A stretch of 64,000 nt of DNA from Mobula hypostoma (lineage: Eukaryota). Below, one piece after another: positions 4,368 through 38,474 of this stretch. The position numbers and the translations under genes were made by a program. The notes beneath the pieces are model-generated. The model saw only the letters and a list, made by a program, of their open reading frames with translations, did not search any database and was not told the DNA's origin. The stretch lies in the NCBI RefSeq assembly GCF_963921235.1, contig NC_086123.1:1550001-1614000 (forward strand), read 5' to 3'. Each line of letters begins with the position of its first letter. Position 1 is the first letter of the stretch.

Positions 4368-4897
4368 TCAGAAATCAACCACTCTTAACTTCTTCTTCTC
4401 TGCCTCAGTGAGTGGTTCCTTGTTTAGAAGTCGGCTATGCAGTTTTGCATGCTTGCCAATACCAAGTTTGGGAAGCCCACGGTTCAGTCCCTCCAAAAGA
4501 ACACAAGCCTTGCAGAGCCCCTGACTAGAAATGTAACCACAGCGCACACAGGTGCCTTGCTTGGGCATCTTCACATCCTCTTTCACAGACAGGTTTTCAC
4601 CAGAGTGAATCACATCCATAATAGCACTTGGTCGGATTGATTCCAGGTCTTTCAGGAAAGTACGGGCATAGCCCCGATATGCATTAGGAGAATACACACA
4701 TTCAGTGGAGAAGTAGTCCAGTTTCTTGAAGTAAGCATACAGCACAATCTCTTTCTCATAAGCATATTTCAGTGGTTTGCAACGAGGAATTGCCCCTTCA
4801 CTACCTGTAGTAATCGCAGTACAGCGACGTAGGCGAGCAATATCTCCTCGCAGGAAATTCATCAAGACTGTCTCAGCAATATCATCTGCGTTGTGAC
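4368..4897 (-). CDS. CTU1: Cytoplasmic tRNA 2-thiolation protein 1, last coding exon (join 6322..5827, 4897..4368; 341 aa)
   Basis: Translation (G)[18 protein letters not shown]...[20 protein letters not shown]...[33 protein letters not shown] matches CTU1/Ncs6; CAG acceptor, phase 1 matches upstream exon; TGA at 4370-4368. Confidence 0.97.
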
Positions 4898-5826
4898 CTG
4901 GGTGTGAAGGGAATAAAAGGGTTATCTTCAACACACAGGCATGCTTGTTACTGAATGAATGTGCACGTCAGAAGTTCACAGGCTCATCCTTGAATTAAGA
5001 CCAGCCAGACAACCAAATTATCACATTAACAAGGCAGGTTATGTAGAACTTAGGGAAAGCAGTGTTGGTGCAAAACATTGAATTAGCTGAGGATTGCCAG
5101 ATTAATTGAATGTGTCCAAAATCATTTAAAAAATTCTCAAAAGCCTATTTGCTCAAATAACTTTTGTTGTGGCTATGTTAAAAGTTAACTGTGGAAAAAC
5201 TTCATTAACCTTTGACAATTTTCTAAGTCTGTCCATTAATGCATAAACACTTACAAAGCTTTATATTATTCCTATTTATTCTTATAACACTATTTTCTCT
5301 AATCCAGATTTAATCCTTGTTCAATATCATGAATGATTTTCCAAAGTAAATCAAGTGCAAGATACCATTGTTAATCAATGGTCATTGGGTGTTGGATTTA
5401 TACCAAAAAGCTTCTGAACAGCTGGTTTCCATCCACTTATGTGGGGAAGGAGTAAGCAAAGTGCAAGACAAAGGATGAGAATGATTTTTCCAATGAGCTT
5501 GGGAGTAAATCAAATAACTCTACACATTGAGTAGCTAGCATAAAATGAAAACCAGCAGAAATGTAGCTGATTATATTAAGAACAATAAGTCTGAACTAAT
5601 AACAAAATATAAATGCTTTGGAACACTGATGGAGGAGAAAATGTATGCTAAGTCAATTATTCTGGGCTGAATCTTCTGAACAGAGAAGTGGATTTGATCA
5701 AAACATTTGAGAGGTAGAGATGGGTGAAATATTGCATTTCTTTTACGGTGAATATTTTGAAGTCATTTACAATGTATGTAAGTTTGTATGAATAGGCTGA
5801 GGTAAATATAGTTAGTTTTGCATTAC

Positions 5827-6322
5827 CTGTGCAGACCTTGTCCACTTTTAGCATCATGGCACCACGATCAAGTGCTTGCCGTCTGAAGACCCCGCAGAAT
5901 GTGCAGTTGTTCTTTAAACCAACTTTCTTCACAATCTGATCCATTGTCCAGCCATATAGCTCTTCATAGGAAATAATCTTGAGTGGCAGATCATACTGTT
6001 GTTGGTTTCTCTTTACCGTCTCTAAGGAGTCATCACGATAGCCACTAATACCTTCGTCCACAGAAAGCAACATCAGATTTAACCCATAATTATATCGATC
6101 ATTTAAGACTTTCAAAATATGAGCCAAAACAGTTGAGTCTTTCCCACCAGAAGCCCCAATTCCAATAGTCTCTCCCTTCTGGAAAAGCTTTGCAGATATG
6201 ATTGTTTGATGAATCTCCTCTTCAAAAGCCCAGAAAAAGCATTCTTTGCAAAGAGAATGTCCTGTTTTGGGACGCCTAAGGACTGCTGCCTTCTTTCCAC
6301 AACTGTTGCAGTAAACAGGCAT
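5827..6322 (-). CDS. CTU1: CTU1 first coding exon (exon begins at 6334, ATG at 6322)
   Basis: [23 protein letters not shown]-loop [36 protein letters not shown]; polypyrimidine/TTTCAG acceptor and GTAATG donor; 496+530 nt = 342 codons including stop. Confidence 0.97.
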
Positions 6323-9300
6323 GTTGAAGCTGATCTGAAAGAACAAAAAAAAACTTATCAAAGTAAAATGGAGGTGGATTGCAAACACAATCATTTCCCA
6401 TTCTATTACCAGCATTATTTTTATTGCAGACTATAATAACTAAAGTGATACAAATCTGGATTGTGGTCCCAGTATTCTTTAAACTTCAGATTAAGGAAAA
6501 GGCTAGGAAACCAAACAAAACAATTTATCCATTTTTGCATTTTGATCCAAGAAAAACCAAAAGAGGCTTGCTTTCCAAAATTTTGGACTAAAATTTGATT
6601 TGTTTGATATGGTGATCACTTTCGTGAATCAGTTCTGAATGTTATTTGCTTACTTTTATGTTTCTTTCCCTACATATTGGGTATTTGAGTTTTCTTTTCA
6701 TAATGGGTTTTGTTGGGTTTCTTTATTCTATATATATATATATCTATATTTCCTATATTCAGTTTGTCCTATCTACCCCTCCCCCACTCTCCCTGCAATT
6801 TAAAACTGATTTATTTTCTCTTTTCACAGTTCTGACCAAGGGCCTTTGATCTGAAATGTTAACTTGATTTTTCTTTCCAAAGATACTGTCTGGTCTGCTC
6901 AGTTTCTAGTTTTTCTTTATTTCCTCAAAACCACCGCCACTCAAAAGCACAACCCTAATGTGTGGGCATTTTAATATTCAGTATTTTTATGAATGAACTA
7001 CACAACCAATTAAACGACATAATCTAGACCCTAATCATAACTTTTTGTAAGAAACTGATTTTACTGGAAAATCTGTCAGGAAAACTGAGCTCTAAAAATC
7101 ACAAAAATCATCAGATCTAAATGGCATAACAATTGGTATCAAAATGAAAAGAAATGCATTTCTAATCAACACTACAAGAAATCCCATTTTACCATTGGCA
7201 ACCAACAATCCTAGATGCTGCAGAGAGCAGCAATAACATATAGAAATATATTAAAAAATCAAAACACATAACCTACAACATTGACTAGTTTTTGACAACT
7301 TCAGAATCAGGTTTATTATCATTGGCATGTGTCATGAAATTTGTTAATTTAGCAGCAGCAGTACAATGTAATACTTAATAATAGTGAGAAAAAGTAAAAG
7401 TATATACATCTATATGAATAGATTAAAATAGTGCAAAAACAGAAATAATATATATTTAAAAAGTAAGGTAGTGTTCAAGGGCTCAATGTCCACTTTAGGA
7501 ATCGTACAGCAGAGGGAAAGAAGCTGTTCAGAATTGCTGAGTGTGTGCCTCCTTCACGACTGTAACAATGAGAAGAGGGCCTGCTCTGGGTGTTGGGGAT
7601 CTTTAATAATGGATGTCTCTGAGGCACCACTCCTTGAAGAGATCTTGGATAACCAATCGATCAAAAACCAAAACAATACTGGAAGCAGCTAAAATATGTA
7701 AAATATTTTTTTAAAATATTAATTGCTTCCAAGCTTTCTCCCTGACATGCTCATTACTTTCAGCATTTTCTGCTTATGTCATTGAATCTTTAGTCAAGGC
7801 TACGATGCCCATCAAATCCTGCAAAGTGTTTATTAATATTAAAGGGATATGAGAAAATGGGAAAACACTTTAGATTAAGGTTACTACTCAAATTCTGTCT
7901 CAATTTGTGATATTATAATGAAATGATTATAGACTAAGGAATAGACTAGTAGTGAATACTTCTAATGGAAGCAGTTTTCTTGCAAATCACATTTTAAAAT
8001 ATACTTTACTGGGATAAATTTGCATTTTTCATATTAAAAGATGAGGACAGCTATGCAATTGATACAAAGAGGAAATGATCCTCTGATTTGCAATTCACTA
8101 TCAGTGCTCATCCTTGGGATGAGTATAATAAATAAACGAGGAACCTTGGCATATGCTCCATATTACGGGCACCAAAACTCATGCTCAAAAATTCCTAACT
8201 TGATTTACACACTAAATTCAACATTTATTGTTATATGCTGGGGATATACAACAGCATGAAATTCCAAAGATCCACAAACCTCAGAACGAATTCCTTTTTG
8301 CCTCCATTATATAAGCAATTTGTTATGTTGAAACTACACTCCTTACTTCTTGGTTCCTCTACGAGGGGAAACACTGTCAGCACCTGTCAAACAGAATCTT
8401 ATTGTTTCAATAAGATCACTTCTTGTTTTTCTTGACTCCATTAAGTGTAAACCTAATCTGTTCCAGCTTTCTGCTCAATTCAACCCATGCACTCCAGAAA
8501 TCAACCATAAACTTTTAAAAGTGCCTTCAGTAAGAGTATAAATCTCTACATAGAGTCTATGTGTAGTCTCATCAATGTACAGAGCAAACATCCTCAGTTT
8601 CAAACTCCATGTTACAATAAGCGCCAACATTACATTTTGCCATCTGAACTTTGTGCTTCTTATACAAATAAAGTCACTGATGTCTTTCTGTAAACGTTTT
8701 ACAATCTCTCTCTATTTAAACAAAATTATATTTTACTTTTCTTATTCTTCCTTCCAAAGTAAGTACTTGTATTTTCCTGTATTACATTCTATCTGCCTAC
8801 TCTTTGCCAACACTAACCAAATATTCCCTCTGTATCCTTAATTTGCATTCCTATCTATCTTTATATCATCAGCAAATATGGCTTTAATACACTTGGTCTC
8901 TTCTACCATCATTAATATAAATTGTAAATACTCAACGTGGATTATAACTACCCAACTCTACTTTGTCAATTTGCTAACCCTCCATTATCCTATCTTGTGT
9001 CATAACCAACTTCTTATTTTTGAAGTGTTCTAAATTCAGCCCAAGTTTCTCTTTAAATACAGATGGAACATTTTTTTCCTGAGATCGTGAGTCTTTGCAA
9101 CTTGCTTCCGCAAAAGGTGAAGGAAGCAGAACCTCTGCCTCATTTTGAAAGAGATTAACGATAAGCAAGGTGATGAAAAGTTGCTATGGATGGACAGGAT
9201 GCGAATTGATGTTACAAAGAGATCATTAAACGAGGAAGCAGACAGAGCCCTGTTTTTAATTTGTACATGTTTGTACAAGCTTCAACAAAATTTATCAGAA

Positions 9301-28640: not shown

Positions 28641-28790
28641 TGACTTTCCACTGGCTGGCAGGACGTCACGTGATTCAAACCGCTCGGCCAATGGCAGCGG
28701 CCGAGCCGTCGCGGTGGGTGCTGGAAGTTGTAGTGTTTTTGTTATTTCAGCTTCGGTTCGCAGCTGGTCGGAGGTTGCTGCTGGCGAAGG
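28520..28790. promoter_or_regulatory. Putative bidirectional CpG-rich promoter shared by CTU1 and SIRT4
   Basis: CpG-rich; GACGTCACGTGAT (CRE-like plus E-box/CLEAR-like) 28662-28674; CCAAT 28688-28692; ACTACAACTTCCAGCA on - strand 28734-28719 (ZNF143/THAP11-type); outward-facing splice donors on both strands. Confidence 0.7.
28735..28789 (+). other. SIRT4: Probable non-coding exon 1 of SIRT4 (TSS approximate)
   Basis: AAG|GTCAGT donor at 28789/28790; the SIRT4 ATG sits directly after an acceptor AG, so an upstream exon is required. Confidence 0.55.
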
Positions 28791-29052: not shown

Positions 29053-32000
29053 CAGGGGTGCAGTGCTAATTTTTTAGGTGCCGGAGCTGACAAAATGCTT
29101 GCCATTTCCTATATCCTCTCTCTATATTTATGTCACACCCGATTTGTGTACCTGCTCATTTCATGTACTAGGCAACTTCCTTGCCCCATTCATGTAATGA
29201 GCAGGTACACAAATTGGGTATTGGGTGTGACTAAATAAATAAATAGATAGATAGATATTTAAATAGCTTCTTATAATGTCAAGCACTAAAGGATGAAAGA
29301 AATATATGAATTCCAAAGCTCCACAGAAATATAGTGACAGTTAAGACATTAACAAGATTATAGCCTGTCACAACATTTCAGTGTATAACTGGTACAATAA
29401 AACATATTAATTTATAACATGACAAAGTATTGCACAGTTGCACTCACTAATTATCATAAAATATAATTATCAAGCAAGTAAAGAAAAAAATGGTAATCAT
29501 GTATTTTACCAATTTAAAAGTAATTACCTACTTACCAAATGCCACCAATGAGAAGTTTCACAATAATTTCCACAAAGGGTCGGGTGTAATATGTGTTGGG
29601 GGGTCTGAAGAAACTCTTGTCCTGGTGTCATCTGCTGATCTGTGGTACTGCAGCCATGATGTGACATACAGCTCAGGATTCCACTGAACTAAAGGAGGTC
29701 CATGTAGTTTAACAAACATAAGTGATGATACATAATTTATGAGAATTCTTGAATGTGTTGTTGTTATTATCAAGTTCATGTGACTGAATCCTCGCTCACT
29801 CAGCAGTACTAATAGGAATAACTTGTGAACAGCTCAGTAATGGGCATAAATCTTGGGGGATGCGGCGTCCACGCTCCTCCACATAATCTCTGAAGGCATG
29901 TATTACAGAGGAAGAAGAAAGCTTAAACCTCTTACAGAGAGATGATATTGCAGCTTCTCCATAATTAGGCAGTGTTTCTCCAGGCCAGTTATCTTTATCA
30001 AGGACACACATTTCATTTAGCAGGGATTTATACATACTTTGAGGTTTAGAAGTTTGAGAACCTTTCAAGGATGTTGCCGTGAACGTTCAGTGCTGAAAAT
30101 TGTTTATAAGACTAGTAAGAAACTGTAGATAATTAATGGAGACAATTTTGTTGTTGCTTGTTAAGGTAATTTCTCCAAACTTCCCCTTTTCAATTACCTC
30201 TTGAGCTTCTAGAGTTCTTGTACCAGGTTGCTCTTTCAGTCCGTGCAGTGATCTTATGCTCCGTTGGATCAATTTGTCAGCATAAACAATCGTAGTAGTG
30301 CGTTTCTGTAACATTCTGACAGTAAACCAAGTTCATGCAACGTGACATACATTAGAGTCCAATAGAAACTGTTCTGAAGAGTCTTTTCAACAGACCTTCA
30401 CAGGTTTTTCTGTCACTCCCAGATCTTGTTTCATCCTTCATTGCTTTTTCAAAATGAAAACACAGTGCTTCATAATTTTGCACACTGCTGCAACTGTTCG
30501 AAACAAGCTAGCTACCCACCCACCTGGTGCTTGTTTTGCAAATTTGTTGTTCTAGCTGAGAGGCACATTCAGACGGTTCCTTTTGATCTACTGTAAACAG
30601 AGTACAATTTGTCCATAAATGATTGAAAATGATTTATTCCATGAACTTCTGTCACCAAATCACCTACTGCAAGTTGTAATCTGTGATTAAATCAGTGCCA
30701 AATTATCACATCAGGGTAATGTTCCTTGAGAATTGTAGCAACACCAGATTTGACACCAAGCACTATGCTCACTCCATCACTAGCAAATGCTACAAGGTTC
30801 TGTTTCAAGTAAGAGTCATCAAACCCATGGTTATTGAGACAGTTCAATTGATGCTAGCAATAGTTGCAGCTTTCTGATCAGGCAGTTCAATTAGATCTAA
30901 AAACCTAAAATGGGGATCTCCTTCCTTATTACTTTCACATTTCAAATAAACTCTTAATACTCAGGCTTATTGACTCATCAATGAGAACAGAAAGTTTGCT
31001 ATTTATCTGCTTGATATGCTGGCAAATTTTCTTTTTCATATTAATGGCTATGTGATTAATTATCTCTGTAGCACTAGTGTGGGAATGCAGTCCAATTCCA
31101 ATGTCAGTACCTTTTTTTTGAAGTTCCAATAAGCCATAGTGATCAGAGTATGGTCTGTCACTCTGAGCTAAATAATATGCAGAACGAAAAATTGAACAAG
31201 TTACCTTTAGAAGTGAAGCATTCATAGTGTCACATAATTTTCCAAGAGCATCTTAACTAGCTATATTTTCAACACTTAGAGCAGCAGTGTGAGCTTTTGA
31301 TAGTTTGTGATCAACAATTTATTTTCCAAGAGACTTCAAGCGTGTACTTCGATCAGCTCCATAATTGGATACTTGGTACATCTGCCCTGCCAATTCTCCC
31401 GTGGTCTTTAAGTTCTTGGGGCTGTAGCACTTTACATAGCTAGCCAGCCATCCCTTACTAGCCTTAAACTCCTTCCTCTTGCTCTCCTCAACCCCCTCAC
31501 AGTAGTGCTCATAGAGGCTCAGTGCTTTTTCATGCATAATTTTGCCATCAACAGGGATATGCTTCTGTGACATGTCCTCCAGCCATACACTTAACGCTTT
31601 CTCAGTCTTTGCAGGCACTTTATCATGAACCAGAGAGACCAGTTTTGCCGTTGTAGGGGTAACACTAACACTTCCAGGAATTTCAGCTTCTTTCTGCTTT
31701 ATTGTGTGAATGCTTGATTCGTTCTTACCGACCTTACGGCCCACTTTGGCAAGCAACATGCCACTTTTCAAAAGATCTAAGATTTTAATTTTCTCGGCGA
31801 ACAATACTCAAACAACGAGTGCTGGAGAGATACTGAGGATCTGTGAAATGGCGGGAGGCTACAGCAGGGTATGCTGGGACAATGGGTCGAAAACAGTCAC
31901 AGCTCCAGGATTTCACCAAAAACGATCAAATATCCCAATGTTATTAGTGATATTTTCCCCACCAGCCACCACCCCCTCTCCCCAACCCCCACTTCCGTAA

Positions 32001-32774: not shown

Positions 32775-34273
32775 TATAAACAGTGTGTCTGTGGGAGCAA
32801 GTTATCAAGTTATGTACTGGAAAGTGATTTAACTCCTGCCTCCCAGGACCTTTCAGGCATATCAGGGATGTCAGAATATTCTCCACTATACTAGTGAACA
32901 TGAAGCTGCTTAACATTATCAGGGATAAAGCCCAACTGACTTGCACACCATCTAGTGCTGTAAATATTGATGGCCTCCATTTCGGGCACACCCTTGCTTC
33001 CGGTCTATACCTTCCATAAACTCAACTACAAATCACCAACCACAGGAACAGGCCCTTCAACCATGATGTTGAGAAACTGATTCAACTGGTATTTAAACAC
33101 TTCACTGAATAATCTCTTCTGCCTGCACATACCCATATCTGTCCCTTTTCTATGTTTGAAGGATCATCACCACCCACGTCAGTGTGCATGAGCAAGTTGC
33201 ACTGGAAGGGTTTCACACCAGCAGCTTAGATCTCCTTATCACTCAGCAGTTGTCCTTCAGGCTGCAGACTCTCAGCCTCGTGTGTGCACTTCAGGGATGC
33301 CAATTCCTGCTCAAGCCGTGAAACCAGAGTCTGATCTCTTCCAGCTGACGACATTGTGGTTTTTCAATAGTAGAAACATCTTGTGTTGTTATATGTCACA
33401 GGAAGTGCATTGGACAAGGTGGAGTGCCCTCCCGTGTCAATATGAGTAAAATTAAAGAACAAAAATAAAACAACTGCATTTTAGGAGAATCGCTTTCGTC
33501 CAATTTTCCAAAATAACAGTAGCTAAAATAAATAAGGTTTTTCTTTGATCTGAATGACAAGGAAAATACAAAATCACCATTCCTTCCTTTCCATTGTGAT
33601 CATGAGGATCTTTCTTAATGTATCTCTCCTGAAGCCATTGTGGCTCTCTGATTACGGTCTTCATTTAAAGCTGATGTACAATTCAATTCAGCTGATACAG
33701 CTATCAGAATTCAGGATGAAAATGCTTAAAAGGGCAATAGAGATAATAACTGGTGCAAAGTGACCTTGTATGTTCCAGAGGGCTTGCATTATATGTAAAT
33801 GTTTTCAAGCTTTAATGTAAACCAAGCAATAAATTATTTAAATTAAACCCCAAAACTATAAACTAAGTTAATTAAATACAAAACCTTTAAAAGAGCCATT
33901 AGAATTAAGGCCACAGTGATCAGGAGAATCTTATCAGATCAAAAATAACATGCGGTTGAAATAAGTAGGACTTACCCTGAGCAGCACACACAAAATGCTG
34001 GACAAACTGTGCAGGCCAGGCAGCGTCTATGGAAATGAGTACAGTCAATGTATCAGGCCGAGACTTATCCTGGTTCAGACAACAAAAAAAGATGCCAGCT
34101 ACTAATCAATCAAATTCTTCCTTTGCACTGACACATCCCTTTATATAAATTTCTCCTGGTTTTTGAGGCCTTAACTTTGATTCTTTATCCTAAATACTTA
34201 GATATTCTTTACTCTTTTGTTTTTAGAAACCATTTAGAAAAAAAATAGTGATTCTGCATGTGTTTATTTCTAG

Positions 34274-35059
34274 ATGCAGTTTCTGGCCACTGCAGAGAAA
34301 TGCCTCTTCTTGAAGCAAATCCGCAAGAGCTACTGTTCAGCCAATGCCTCTAACTTTTCATTTGTTCCTTCTTGCCTTCCTTTGGACACCATTGAGTTTG
34401 AGGATCTCCAGGAATTTCTCTTGCGGTCCAAGAAACTGTTTGTGCTAACTGGAGCAGGAGTGTCAACGGAGTCAGGTATTCCCGATTATCGCTCTGAAAA
34501 TGTGGGACTTTATGCTCGGACGGCAAAACGCCCCATTCAACACTCTGAATTTGTCCGCAGTGCCGAGGGCAGGCAGAGATACTGGGCACAAACTTACGTT
34601 GGCTGGCCACAATTTAGCTCTCGCCAGGTAAATGAAGCACACAAAGCTCTAAGTAAATGGGAGACAATGGGAAAACTGCATTGGCTGGTGACCCAGAATG
34701 TGGATTCATTGCATACGAAGGCAGGAAGCCGGAACCTGACTGAACTTCATGGCTGTTCGCACAGAGTGATTTGTCTTGGCTGTGGGGAGATAACCGCTAG
34801 GAGTCGCCTTCAAGAAGAATTTACAGCTCTGAATCCAGCTTGGATTGAAGAAGCACATCAAATAGCTCCAGATGGAAATGTTTTGTTTGCCGATGAGCAA
34901 GTCAAACACTTCAGCGTTCCCCCATGCAAGAATTGTGGTGGAGTCCTGAAACCTGATGTCACCTTTTTTGGAGACACAGTGAGCAAAGAGAAAGTGAATT
35001 TTGTCTATGAACGTGTGGCGGAGTCTGATGCGGTTCTAGTCGCTGGCTCTTCACTACAG
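34274..35059 (+). CDS. SIRT4: NAD-dependent mitochondrial sirtuin-4, first coding exon (join 34274..35059, 38322..38474; 312 aa)
   Basis: [20 protein letters not shown], catalytic ELHG, Zn ligands [23 protein letters not shown]; class II sirtuin loop APDGxV; basic N-terminal presequence-like region; CAG|GTGAGG donor. Confidence 0.97.
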
Positions 35060-38000
35060 GTGAGGGGCTGAGATTATCAAAGAGGTTGTCACTCGATCAG
35101 GATTAAAAGTGGCAGATCGAATTGTCTGATTTTTCACTTTTTTGACATCTTCTCACCCTGCGGACATCAGGTGTGGTTAGCTGCTAACTATCCAAGTAAC
35201 TATTGTTTACATTAATGTAGTCATCGCAATTTAAATTGCAGGACAGTGGAAGGAAACCCAGCTGAGAATTTACAGAGATCTGTGAAAAGCTTTCACTTAA
35301 GATAAATATCATTATGAGAAGAACAAAACTCTACTTTGCATTGAGCAACCATTCGTAGGATCTTCAAAATGGGGGCTTTCGTGAATCTTTGAAATTCTCA
35401 CTACCATAATTCTCCATACTTTATGGTTTGCTCTTTTCCTGTTACTGACATTTTAAAGAGAATAGTAACAGCGTTTTGGATACACTTCAGTTACTGGAAT
35501 CTGAAATTCAGTGTCTAAAAAGGTGGTAGAAGAGCATTCAATCATAGCATGAATTAAATTCAGTTCAAACTGCCTGTAAGGACAACATAGCTTGTCCCAT
35601 TCCACTGCCTATTCTCTGGAACTCTGATTCCTTTTTTAATCCATTCCTCTTTCTGAAAATCACATTTGAATCTGTTGCTGTGACCACAGCAGGTAATGCA
35701 TTCTAGGAGTGGACCGGCCACTCTATAAAAGGAAGCTTTTCTGCATATAGATATTGTTTCTTTTGCCAAACACTTCAAATCTCTGTTCTTTAGCTCTTGA
35801 CTCAGTTTCTCTCTACCTGGTTAATGGACTCCTCATTTTAAACACGTTTATCACATCTTCTCTCAATGCCCTCTGCTTGAAAAAAAGAGGGTAGGGAATG
35901 GGAGGTGACCAGACAAAATATTAAGTCTCCAAGAATAGGTGTATCTGTTCATGTCATTCTCAACTGTTTACTTCAACTGAAATGTTGTTCTGTGACTGTA
36001 ATTTATTGGAGACCAAACCATGTAAAATCTAACTGTGTGATTGATATCTTTATATTTCTGTCCTTAAGACTTTCCCAAATCCTACATTTATATTCTCAAT
36101 TTACTCAGTTCTGAATTTGATAAAAGCCACTGCGTACTTTCTGAAACATGAGATTCTGCAGATGCTGGAAATCTGAAGTAACTCACACATAATGCTGGAG
36201 GAACTCAGTTGGTCAAGCATTGTCTATGGAGAGGAATAAAGAAGCGATATTTCAGGCCTGGACCCTTCATCGGGACTGGAAAGGAGGCTAAAGGCAGAGT
36301 AAAGTGGAGGGGGAGGGAAAAGGGCTAGAAAGGAGTATACTTTCAGGGAGCATTCACCCTGCACCAAAAGATACAAGCAGAAAATACTAAACTGCACCAA
36401 TTTTGTGTTGTCATACACCACATTCCGTAATGACAGAACAACTACACATCCAGAATACTGCTCTGCAGTTATCAGGCAGTATTCCTTGTTCACATTTCCC
36501 ATCAAACAATTCTTATAAAAGGCTTGTAGGATTGCCACTGAAACTTCATATTCTAACTAGGTTGGAATATTAAGTCAGATTATGGACACCACATTTTAGG
36601 AAGCATGTTCAAAACTTGGATCACATGTGGAAGATTATCTTCTAGAATTATATCAGGGATAAGAGAAAATAGTTACCTGGAAGAATAAGAAAACCTGCTA
36701 TTGCTTTCCTTAGAGCTGCAAAGGCTACGAAGAGCTTTATTAGAGGTGTCCAACATGAAGGAATTTTTATAGAGCTGTGAAGAAAATAGGTGATTTTATT
36801 TTGAATGCTGAATTGTGATTTGTAAGGCACGGCCTAAAAAGGAGACAGTAGCCAACTATTCTTGAAAACTTTCAAAACTATAGCAAGATATTTTTAAGGG
36901 TTTAAAGTTATGCAGAGTGGAGCTAATTGGTTAGCTCAAAAAGGTCAAGTGATGTCCTTATGTGCTGCATTATGTTTATAATAATGTGTCTAGAGGATAT
37001 GTTAGTCCTCACAATGGTATTTCCTCTTCCTAGTAATTTGGATCAACATGCCATTTTTTTTTATACATGTTTCAGACTCAGTCTCTGAGGTAATGCTTAA
37101 AAACAGAGTGGACATAGTGCCTTTTACATTTGAGGAAATTAGGAAGGACGCCTCTTTTCCTGAGGAGCAGGCACTCTGTTTGGCTGCAGCAGATGTGAGG
37201 AAGACCCTAGCCCGGGTCAATCAATGTGAAGCTGTGGGGTCTGATAAAGTACCTGGTCAAATATTACTGAAATATTAAATACACAACACTCCTCCCTGTA
37301 TAGCTACAATCTCCAGCTCAACTACTATATACACATCCACAGCACAGAGGATTTTAAATTGTCCCGTTCAGGCGTAAGAATTTAATCACTGTGAAGAATT
37401 TATTAATCTAGTGAGATAAAGGCTTTCCTGACCAGCGAGGTCACTCTGCTCGGCAGGTTAGACTTGCGGCTGCGAAACAAATTCGAGTGCTTGTAGAGTT
37501 GACTCCAAGTGCAGGGAGTGGTCTGGCAGCTCTGGACACCTAACAATTGACACTGCTCTCCTCAGCTGATCGAGGTGTTGTCTCTGGGTGACATCAGACA
37601 CAATCTCTGCTGTGTAGGAGAGTGGTCCAGTCTGGTCCTTAATTTTGCCAAGTAGTCCCTTGTCCAGGGGTGAAACATCAAACCTCCTTGTTTGAAGAGC
37701 CCTCAATTTGTTTCAGTTGTTTGTCCTGCACACTCCTTCCGAGATTGGGTTTGCGCAGTTCGAAGGGCGAGTGTAAAGGACAAACCAGGAACAGCGTAAC
37801 TGGTGAATTGTTGGTTGTGCAGTATGCTGCATTGCGTTATGCATGGAGGAAACTGGTGTGCTCTGCTGACATTGTTTGCAATGTGTTTTTCACACTCTGG
37901 ACGAACCTTTCAGCCAAGCCATTCGTAGCTGGGTGGTATAGTGCAGATCTAATATGCCTTATTCCATTCATTTTCAGGAATGACTGAAATTATTCCCATA

Positions 38001-38321
38001 CGAACTGTGGCCCATTGTCACTAACACCAGTCTTAGAGAAGAGGATTCTCAACACATCAGCTGACTAGGAGACTATTGGAAACACTTCAGGCAACTTTGT
38101 AGATGCTCCTACTATACCAAGAATTTTGTGCCCATGAATGGCCTGGCAAAATGTACATGAATCCTCTGGAAGGACAATGCAGGCTTTTCTCAGTCGGGGG
38201 GGGGGGGGGTGAAAGGCATTAAGCTGCTGTCTTAGTGTTGGGTTCAGATACATGATGGATTACACCTGCCTGGGCAGTTTATCAATTAAAGTATTTAACT
38301 ATTTATGTTTTCCATTACTAG

Positions 38322-38474
38322 GTGTACTCAGGATATAGATTCATCATTGCAGCCTATGAGAAGAAGTTGCCAGTTGCAATACTAAATATTGGGGAGACCA
38401 GAGCGGATAAACTGGCCACCCTGAAAATCAGTGCTCGATGTGGGGAGGTTCTGCCAAGCATTCTTCCCTTTTAA
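38322..38474 (+). CDS. SIRT4: SIRT4 last coding exon
   Basis: TAG acceptor, then [53 protein letters not shown] in phase 0; too short for the ORF track. Confidence 0.96.

What the first reader, a model, noticed from the sequence alone, without database searches (positions are those of the whole stretch)
34580..34879. SIRT4 with a rewired acyl pocket: YWARN->YWAQT and APDGD->APDGN
Seen: TAC TGG GCA CAA ACT (Y103-W-A-Q106-T107) and GAT GGA AAT (D200-G-N202), plus QPN->QVN. NAD-binding, catalytic His159 and Zn motifs are intact, so this is not general decay. Recalled knowledge: human SIRT4 Tyr105/Arg108 (YWARN) is the pair proposed to recognise carboxylated acyl-lysines (HMG, methylglutaryl), Arg-to-Gln at that site has been used as an activity-impairing mutant, and the SIRT4-specific APDGD loop contacts this site. 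Inference: losing both the Arg and a loop Asp looks like a coordinated, charge-neutralising specificity shift. This would be notable in an elasmobranch with ketone-body, amino-acid and urea-centred mitochondrial metabolism.
Basis: partly seen in the sequence, partly recalled or inferred. Interest (0 to 1): 0.75.

Follow-up and report, generated by a model that had tools for sequence, protein, structure and literature searches.

The report
Stingray SIRT4 lost a conserved salt bridge
The devil-ray copy of the mitochondrial enzyme SIRT4 is intact and expressed, but it and all other sequenced stingrays have neutralised both halves of an otherwise almost universally conserved Arg-Asp salt bridge that ties a SIRT4-specific loop to the active site, a real but probably modest, lineage-specific change rather than a rewired substrate pocket.

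Summary
Window 34274-35059 (+) is the large coding exon of SIRT4 of Mobula hypostoma (100% identical to XP_062890215). It reads YWAQT, QVN and APDGN where 130 of 130 other vertebrate SIRT4 sequences have Arg and Asp.

- **Not an error.** Gln106 and Asn202 are shared by M. birostris, Hemitrygon and Hypanus, and a spliced RNA contig matches the exon exactly.
- **Not an elasmobranch trait.** Sawfish, skates, electric ray, sharks and chimaera keep Arg and Asp, so the change dates to the stingray stem.
- **What the two residues are.** They match Arg107 and Asp203 of Xenopus Sirt4. In that crystal structure (Pannek 2017) they form a salt bridge between helix α5 and the Sirt4-loop and line the extra channel. 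Arg107 points away from the acyl pocket.
- **Expected size of effect.** Alanine mutants raised the HMG-peptide Km only 2.5-fold and 1.3-fold.
- **Selection.** The gene is under purifying selection (ω 0.30 against a background of 0.26; ω=1 rejected). No branch-site signal was found. The loop motif evolves about six times faster in stingrays (p=0.0006).

Best reading: a paired replacement of a salt bridge that loosens the loop tether, with modest kinetic effects. A shift in substrate specificity is untested.

The parts
28691..28789 (+). Upstream exon of the annotated SIRT4 model. It carries an in-frame upstream ATG and is probably mostly 5' leader; the exact boundary is approximate.
   Evidence: tblastn of P0124 residues 1-33 against the window. 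A homologous N-terminal extension is present in Hemitrygon isoform X1.
34274..35059 (+). Main SIRT4 coding exon, codons 1-262: targeting peptide, NAD-binding motif, helix α5, catalytic His159, zinc module and Sirt4-loop.
   Evidence: ORF; Pfam SIR2 E 1e-49; 100% identical to M. hypostoma XP_062890215; RNA contig with no differences.
34565..34567 (+). Glu98 codon (GAG). This is the stingray-stem change K98E at the N-terminal end of helix α5.
   Evidence: AAG in Pristis, Amblyraja and Heptranchias. No other vertebrate among the 130 sampled has Glu here.
34580..34594 (+). YWAQT in helix α5. Gln106 (CAA, 34589-34591) replaces the salt-bridge Arg (xSirt4 Arg107, human Arg108). Thr107 (ACT, 34592-34594) replaces the Asn that points into the acyl channel (xSirt4 Asn108); this second change is Mobula-only.
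   Evidence: Structural roles from PMC5686155.
34625..34633 (+). QVN. Val119 replaces Pro, through Ala in the other batoids.
   Evidence: CCA in shark and chimaera, GCA in sawfish and skate, GTA here.
34748..34750 (+). Catalytic His159 codon (CAT), intact.
   Evidence: invariant column.
34859..34900 (+). Sirt4-loop motif, residues 196-209 ([14 protein letters not shown] against the canonical G(L/V)APDGDVFL(T/S)(D/E)EQ). Asn202 (AAT, 34877-34879) replaces the salt-bridge Asp (xSirt4 Asp203).
   Evidence: Motif definition and salt bridge from PMC5686155.
38322..38474 (+). Last coding exon (codons 263-312) plus the TAA stop. The acceptor AG is at 38320-38321.
   Evidence: The splice joint 35059|38322 is seen in RNA contigs of two species.

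Best explanation
This is the single, intact, transcribed SIRT4 orthologue of Mobula hypostoma. In the common ancestor of the sequenced stingrays (Dasyatidae plus Mobulidae), both partners of the Arg-Asp salt bridge were replaced by their neutral amide counterparts. In canonical SIRT4 this bridge clamps the SIRT4-specific loop onto the centre of helix α5 and lines the extra SIRT4 channel. Arg became Gln by a CGA>CAA CpG transition, and Asp became Asn by GAT>AAT.

Shown here:
- The pairing, the dating to the stingray stem, retention in four species, and intact catalytic residues.
- Expression and correct splicing.
- Gene-wide purifying selection.
- Faster evolution of the loop motif in stingrays only.

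Inferred:
- A Gln-Asn pair can still form a hydrogen bond but no longer an ionic clamp. The loop is therefore held less tightly, and the channel mouth loses one positive and one negative charge.
- By analogy with xSirt4 R107A, D203A and the loop-deletion variants, the enzyme should stay catalytically competent. Its affinity for HMG-type dicarboxyl-acyl peptides should be a few-fold weaker, and loop autoinhibition may be relaxed.
- In Mobula the further changes N107T, R85K, A145S and F204L should push in the same direction.

Whether the change was adaptive or a compensated, near-neutral pair is not resolved.
For: - Identity and integrity: (E 4e-125, gapless alignment to xSirt4 5oj7).
- Fold: the AF2 model has pLDDT 92.5 and superposes on 5oj7 at 0.7 Å over 281 columns.
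- Salt bridge, channel lining and kinetics of R107A, D203A, N108A and loop deletions: PMC5686155.
- Conservation: Arg and Asp are invariant in 130/130 other vertebrates, and both changed only in the stingray sequences (six database proteins plus the window's own; four species). The Arg/Asp pair is present in 132/140 sequences of the class II alignment.
- Chance: with 13 stem substitutions placed uniformly on 281 core sites, hitting both named sites has probability (13×12)/(281×280) = 0.002 (my arithmetic).
- Selection: ω is 0.30 on the Mobula branch against 0.26 background (p=0.55), and ω=1 is rejected at p=1.5e-6.
- Loop acceleration: 4 of 13 stem changes fall in the 14-residue motif (p=0.0015). 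Across 16 chondrichthyans the stingray clade has 9 loop and 49 other changes, against 8 and 270 elsewhere (odds ratio 6.2, p=0.0006).
- Expression: spliced RNA contigs, identical in the same species. A second, roughly 93.5% identical stingray keeps the Gln106 codon.
- Single copy: no second SIRT4 cluster from any of the four annotated stingray genomes appears among the top 120 hits.
Against: - No assay or structure of a stingray enzyme exists. The loop-untethering effect is an inference from alanine mutants of a frog enzyme, and those effects were small.
- AF2 still predicts the loop docked, although it may simply follow its homologues.
- The branch-site test (LRT 0) and the test for a foreground shift in site class (p=0.35) find nothing, so codon models give no support for any special regime. 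Power is low: five taxa and one long foreground branch.
- The loop enrichment test is post hoc, although the motif boundaries come from the literature.
- The Asn202 codon could not be read in the extra stingray run, because the table was cut off after 34819.
Confidence: 0.58

Rival explanations
1. Adaptive re-specification. Loss of the Arg and the loop Asp, plus N107T in Mobula, was selected to change which acyl-lysines SIRT4 removes. The shift would be away from carboxylated acyls (HMG, methylglutaryl) and towards neutral or longer acyls.
For: - The changed residues line the SIRT4 channel and border the acyl site. R107A, N108A and Y104F/R107A each raise the HMG Km 2.5- to 3.3-fold.
- All six Mobula deviations at ultra-conserved sites (R85K, R106Q, N107T, A145S, D202N, F204L) lie around the channel, loop or nicotinamide site.
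- G196Q needed two nucleotide steps.
- The new states are retained in four species.
Against: - Arg107 points away from the acyl pocket in the crystal structure.
- The branch-site test gives ω2 = 1 and LRT 0.
- The metabolic rationale fails, because all other cartilaginous fishes keep the canonical residues.
- Mutant effects are only a few-fold and leave vmax unchanged.
Confidence: 0.15
2. Functionally silent compensated drift. A frequent CpG transition removed the Arg. The now unpaired buried Asp was then neutralised, or the two happened in the reverse order. The Gln-Asn hydrogen bond restores the original geometry, and nothing measurable changed.
For: - CGA>CAA is a CpG transition and GAT>AAT a single transition.
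- Gene-wide ω is unchanged and there is no positive-selection signal.
- AF2 predicts the same docked loop.
- D203A is nearly neutral in vitro.
Against: - The pair is kept from bacteria-like class II sirtuins to mammals, which argues that the charged form matters.
- The loop motif speeds up specifically in stingrays after the change.
- R107A is not neutral for HMG Km.
Confidence: 0.25
3. Artefact or decay: an assembly or sequencing error, a pseudogene, or a divergent paralogue alongside a canonical copy.
For: None found.
Against: - The same residues occur in four independently assembled species.
- The RNA contig is identical and correctly spliced.
- The reading frame and all catalytic motifs are intact.
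- ω=1 is rejected.
- The same CTU1-like upstream neighbour is present here and in Hemitrygon.
- No second stingray SIRT4 cluster was found.
Confidence: 0.02

Closest known systems
Xenopus tropicalis Sirt4 (PDB 5oj7, 5ojn; Pannek et al. 2017, PMC5686155)
   Same: 64% identical with a gapless alignment over 281 residues. The AF2 model superposes at 0.7 Å. It has the same Sirt4-loop insertion, the same Tyr of the Tyr-X-X-Arg motif, and the same catalytic His, zinc site and NAD motif.
   Different: Arg107 is Gln and Asp203 is Asn, so the salt-bridge partners are gone. Asn108 is Thr. The loop motif differs at 5 of 14 positions (G196Q, D202N, F204L, L205F, T206A). Arg86 is Lys.
SIRT4 of non-stingray batoids and sharks (Pristis pectinata XP_051888291, Amblyraja radiata XP_032899480 and others)
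   Same: They are orthologues, 74-83% identical, with the same two-coding-exon structure. Background ω is similar.
   Different: All keep YWARN and the Asp of the PDGD motif. Skates and Narcine vary only at loop positions 198-199.
SIRT5 Tyr-X-X-Arg carboxylate-recognition motif (Tyr102/Arg105 in human, Tyr98/Arg101 in zebrafish)
   Same: SIRT4 carries a Tyr-X-X-Arg in the same helix α5, and both enzymes act on dicarboxyl-acyl lysines.
   Different: In SIRT4 the motif is shifted by one helix turn. The Arg points away from the acyl channel and bridges to the loop rather than to the substrate carboxylate. Losing it is therefore not equivalent to the SIRT5 Arg105 mutants.

Membership tests
SIRT4 (class II sirtuin) orthologue | Sir2 catalytic domain with the GAGxSxxSGIPDYR NAD-binding motif and the catalytic His | tested here: met
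   Pfam SIR2 E 1e-49. G60-A-G, S64 to R73 and H159 lie in invariant columns.
SIRT4 (class II sirtuin) orthologue | Zinc module with two CxxC pairs | tested here: met
   C167, C170, C218 and C221 are invariant.
SIRT4 (class II sirtuin) orthologue | SIRT4-specific extended loop between α8 and α9 (about 12 residues) reaching the active site | tested here: met
   The loop is present at full length with no indel against 5oj7. It is modelled at pLDDT 90-92.
SIRT4 (class II sirtuin) orthologue | Best hits are SIRT4 of related species, with conserved gene neighbourhood | tested here: met
   100% identical to M. hypostoma SIRT4, 96-97% to M. birostris and 89-91% to dasyatids. The CTU1-like neighbour is the same as in Hemitrygon.
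SIRT4 (class II sirtuin) orthologue | Conserved loop sequence G(L/V)APDGDVFL(T/S)(D/E)EQ, called strictly conserved in higher eukaryotes | tested here: not met
   The window reads [14 protein letters not shown], which differs at 5 of 14 positions. This is a conservation statement from 2017 data rather than a functional definition.
SIRT4 (class II sirtuin) orthologue | Arg107-Asp203 (xSirt4) salt bridge between α5 and the loop | tested here: not met
   The window has Gln106 and Asn202. Arg/Asp is present in 130/130 other vertebrates and in 132/140 sequences of the class II alignment.
SIRT4 (class II sirtuin) orthologue | NAD-dependent de-HMG-ylase, lipoamidase or deacylase activity, and mitochondrial location | not testable with these tools
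   This needs recombinant enzyme and localisation assays. An N-terminal presequence-like extension of about 29 residues, modelled at low confidence, precedes the core.

The most novel reading that the evidence does not exclude
Stingray SIRT4 is a natural 'open-loop' SIRT4. Dismantling the α5-loop clamp releases the SIRT4-specific loop and neutralises the side channel. This changes acyl preference (weaker on HMG and methylglutaryl, better on longer or neutral acyls such as lipoyl or octanoyl) and/or removes loop- and NADH-dependent autoinhibition. It would be a lineage-specific retuning of a mitochondrial regulator, taken further in Mobula by N107T, R85K, A145S and F204L.
Probability: 0.2. Interest if true: 0.6.

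Novelty: new variant of a known kind. Interest (0 to 1): 0.4.

Why it matters
SIRT4 is the least understood mitochondrial sirtuin. The role of its isoform-specific loop and extra channel was left open by the only crystal-structure study, which suggested a regulatory switch with an unknown trigger.

Stingrays offer a natural, long-lived double mutant of the one salt bridge that anchors that loop, in an enzyme that is otherwise conserved, expressed and under selection. Comparing stingray and sawfish enzymes, with reciprocal swaps at two residues, would test directly whether the clamp controls loop dynamics, acyl selectivity or NADH sensitivity.

The finding is not a general feature of elasmobranch metabolism. 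Existing mutagenesis predicts effects of only a few-fold, so the significance is moderate.

Tried and rejected
- **Stingray coding DNA.** I tried to fetch it for Hemitrygon, Hypanus and M. birostris for a clade-level dN/dS. The places were found, but no DNA was served because the files were too large. One isoform was not on record and one look-up timed out. The codon tests therefore use a single foreground branch (stingray stem plus Mobula lineage) and five taxa.
- **Codon models.** Branch-site model A, in my own implementation, gave ω2 = 1 and LRT 0. Model A-null against M1a gave p=0.35. There is no support for positive selection or for a shift in site class. Power is low, so this is not evidence against either.
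- **Count of deviations.** Mobula has 6 deviations at 131 ultra-conserved sites. That is high but not unique: lungfish has 9, Polypterus 7, and some probable mis-models have more. I rejected the count alone as a signal.
- **Channel-lining residues.** Enrichment among the 11 channel-lining residues was 2 hits, p=0.086, not significant.
- **Literature.** Searches for a SIRT4 Arg108Gln or Tyr105 mutant found nothing. Anderson 2017 (PMC5444661) is not held. No SIRT4 paper on elasmobranchs surfaced.
- **Reads.** The read laying difference table was truncated after 34819, so the Asn202 codon in organisms C and D was not seen. Differences private to run X17 were hidden by its low depth.

Full report
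**What is there**

Window 34274-35059 (+) is one open exon of 262 codons with a GT donor at 35060. Together with 38322-38471 and a TAA stop (acceptor AG at 38320-21), it encodes an intact 312-aa protein.

- Pfam assigns the Sir2 family at E 1e-49.
- The protein is 100% identical to the annotated SIRT4 of Mobula hypostoma, 96-97% to M. birostris and 89-91% to the dasyatid stingrays Hemitrygon akajei and Hypanus sabinus.
- The annotation adds an upstream exon at about 28691-28789.
- The NAD motif, His159 and the four zinc cysteines lie in invariant columns.

**Is it real and expressed**

A run of the same species holds a contig that matches 34272-35060 with no differences. It also holds contigs joining 35059 to 38322 across a GT..AG intron, so the run contains spliced RNA.

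A second run comes from a different stingray. It is about 93.5% identical and carries the 9-nt N-terminal insertion inferred for the dasyatids from the protein alignment. It is spliced in the same way, keeps the CAA codon of Gln106 and GTA of Val119, and has AAT (Asn) at 107. Its codon 202 was not visible, because the difference table was cut off after 34819.

**Who has the changes**

- In an alignment of 136 vertebrate SIRT4 sequences, Arg106 and Asp202 are invariant in all 130 non-stingray sequences. Both are replaced in every stingray sequence.
- Sawfish, two skates, an electric ray, seven sharks and a chimaera keep YWARN and the Asp of the PDGD motif.
- The stem of the sequenced stingrays carries L42F, K98E, R106Q, A119V, R154N, P175A, G196Q, D202N, L205F, T206A, I280V, A287E and C308S. 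N107T, R85K, A145S and F204L are Mobula-only.
- QPN was already QAN in all batoids.
- Across the wider family (an alignment of representatives of 50% identity clusters, plus the window protein and five vertebrate references), 132 of 140 sequences have the Arg/Asp pair. The only other Gln is a metagenomic Sir2 protein that keeps the Asp.
- No second SIRT4 cluster from the four annotated stingray genomes appears among the best 120 hits.
- The upstream neighbour is a CTU1-like gene both here and in Hemitrygon.

**What the residues do in known SIRT4**

The protein aligns without gaps to Xenopus Sirt4 (5oj7, E 4e-125), so window numbering is xSirt4 minus one. The AF2 model (pLDDT 92.5) superposes on 5oj7 at 0.7 Å. 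Pannek et al. 2017 (PMC5686155) report the following.

- An Arg107/Asp203 salt bridge connects the centre of helix α5 to the Sirt4-loop.
- Both residues line the additional SIRT4 channel.
- Arg107 of the Tyr-X-X-Arg motif points away from the acyl channel, unlike the SIRT5 Arg.
- Asn108 points into the acyl channel.
- The loop motif G(L/V)APDGDVFL(T/S)(D/E)EQ is strictly conserved.
- Km for HMG-peptide is 6.8 µM for wild type, 17.2 for R107A, 9.0 for D203A, 19.3 for N108A and 8.5-10.1 for loop deletions. vmax is roughly unchanged.

If 13 stem substitutions fell uniformly on 281 core sites, the chance of hitting both named sites is about 0.002 (my arithmetic).

**Selection**

I extracted coding sequences from the window and from Pristis, Amblyraja, Heptranchias and Callorhinchus loci. 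I then fitted GY94-F3x4 models written for this purpose.

- Background ω is 0.26 and the Mobula branch 0.30. This is not different (p=0.55), and ω=1 is rejected (p=1.5e-6).
- The Mobula branch is longer than that of Pristis (0.31 against 0.13 substitutions per codon).
- Branch-site model A gives ω2 = 1 and LRT 0. The foreground-shift class is not significant against M1a (p=0.35).
- At the protein level the loop stands out. Four of 13 stem changes fall in the 14-residue motif (p=0.0015).
- Fitch counts on 16 chondrichthyans give 9 loop and 49 other changes in the stingray clade, against 8 and 270 elsewhere (odds ratio 6.2, p=0.0006).
- R106Q is a CpG transition (CGA>CAA), D202N a single transition, and G196Q needs two steps.

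**Reading**

The gene is a functional SIRT4 orthologue whose α5-loop clamp was turned from an ionic pair into a neutral Gln-Asn pair in the stingray ancestor. After that, the loop evolved faster while the rest of the enzyme stayed constrained.

By analogy with the frog mutants, I infer a loosened loop, a channel mouth without the two charges, and affinity for HMG-type substrates that is a few-fold weaker. Mobula's N107T should add to this. Catalysis should be retained.

Whether this was adaptive, or a compensated pair fixed by drift, cannot be decided from these data. The claim of an Arg-to-Gln mutant could not be verified.

**Comparison and novelty**

The gene itself is annotated and known. 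The paired loss of a nearly universal class II sirtuin salt bridge in one vertebrate order is a new variant of a known enzyme. Its interest is moderate: it is a ready-made natural experiment on the function of the Sirt4-loop.

Noticed in passing
window 37978-38098 (+): RNA contigs of the same species also join 35059 to about 37978, including an extra exon. That exon reads E-stop immediately in frame, so this minor SIRT4 transcript would lack the last 50 residues. It is probably a non-productive or poison-exon isoform.
   Followed up: partly
window 36146-36270, with further patches at 37120-38176, inside the SIRT4 intron: A short interspersed repeat reaches summed contig depths of 4,000-36,000 in the RNA-like runs of all four ray species laid. 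Many contigs run on into unrelated sequence, so this is a very abundant transcribed repeat family shared across stingrays.
   Followed up: no
window 4368-6415 (-): Two ORFs carry PP-loop ATP_bind_3, a TtuA-like N-terminal zinc finger and zn-ribbon_14, which makes a CTU1-like tRNA thiolation gene. A gene with the same domains lies directly upstream of SIRT4 in Hemitrygon. In Amblyraja the upstream neighbour is paxillin. In Mobula the gap to the SIRT4 5' exon is about 22 kb.
   Followed up: partly
window 31319-31804 (-): A 161-aa ORF with a Tc5 transposase DNA-binding HTH domain (E 1e-9) lies in the first SIRT4 intron. It is a DNA-transposon remnant.
   Followed up: no
proteins P0011 (Narcine), P0126 and P0127 (skates): Other batoids also vary at the otherwise fixed loop tip. 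Narcine reads GADGD (A198G, P199A) and has R86K. Skates have Phe or Leu at 198. All of them keep the Arg-Asp pair.
   Followed up: partly
window 34274-35059 and 38322-38471 (the coding sequence): The Mobula/stingray branch is about 2.3 times longer than the sister Pristis branch (0.31 against 0.13 substitutions per codon) at similar ω. This indicates a generally faster rate rather than relaxed constraint.
   Followed up: partly
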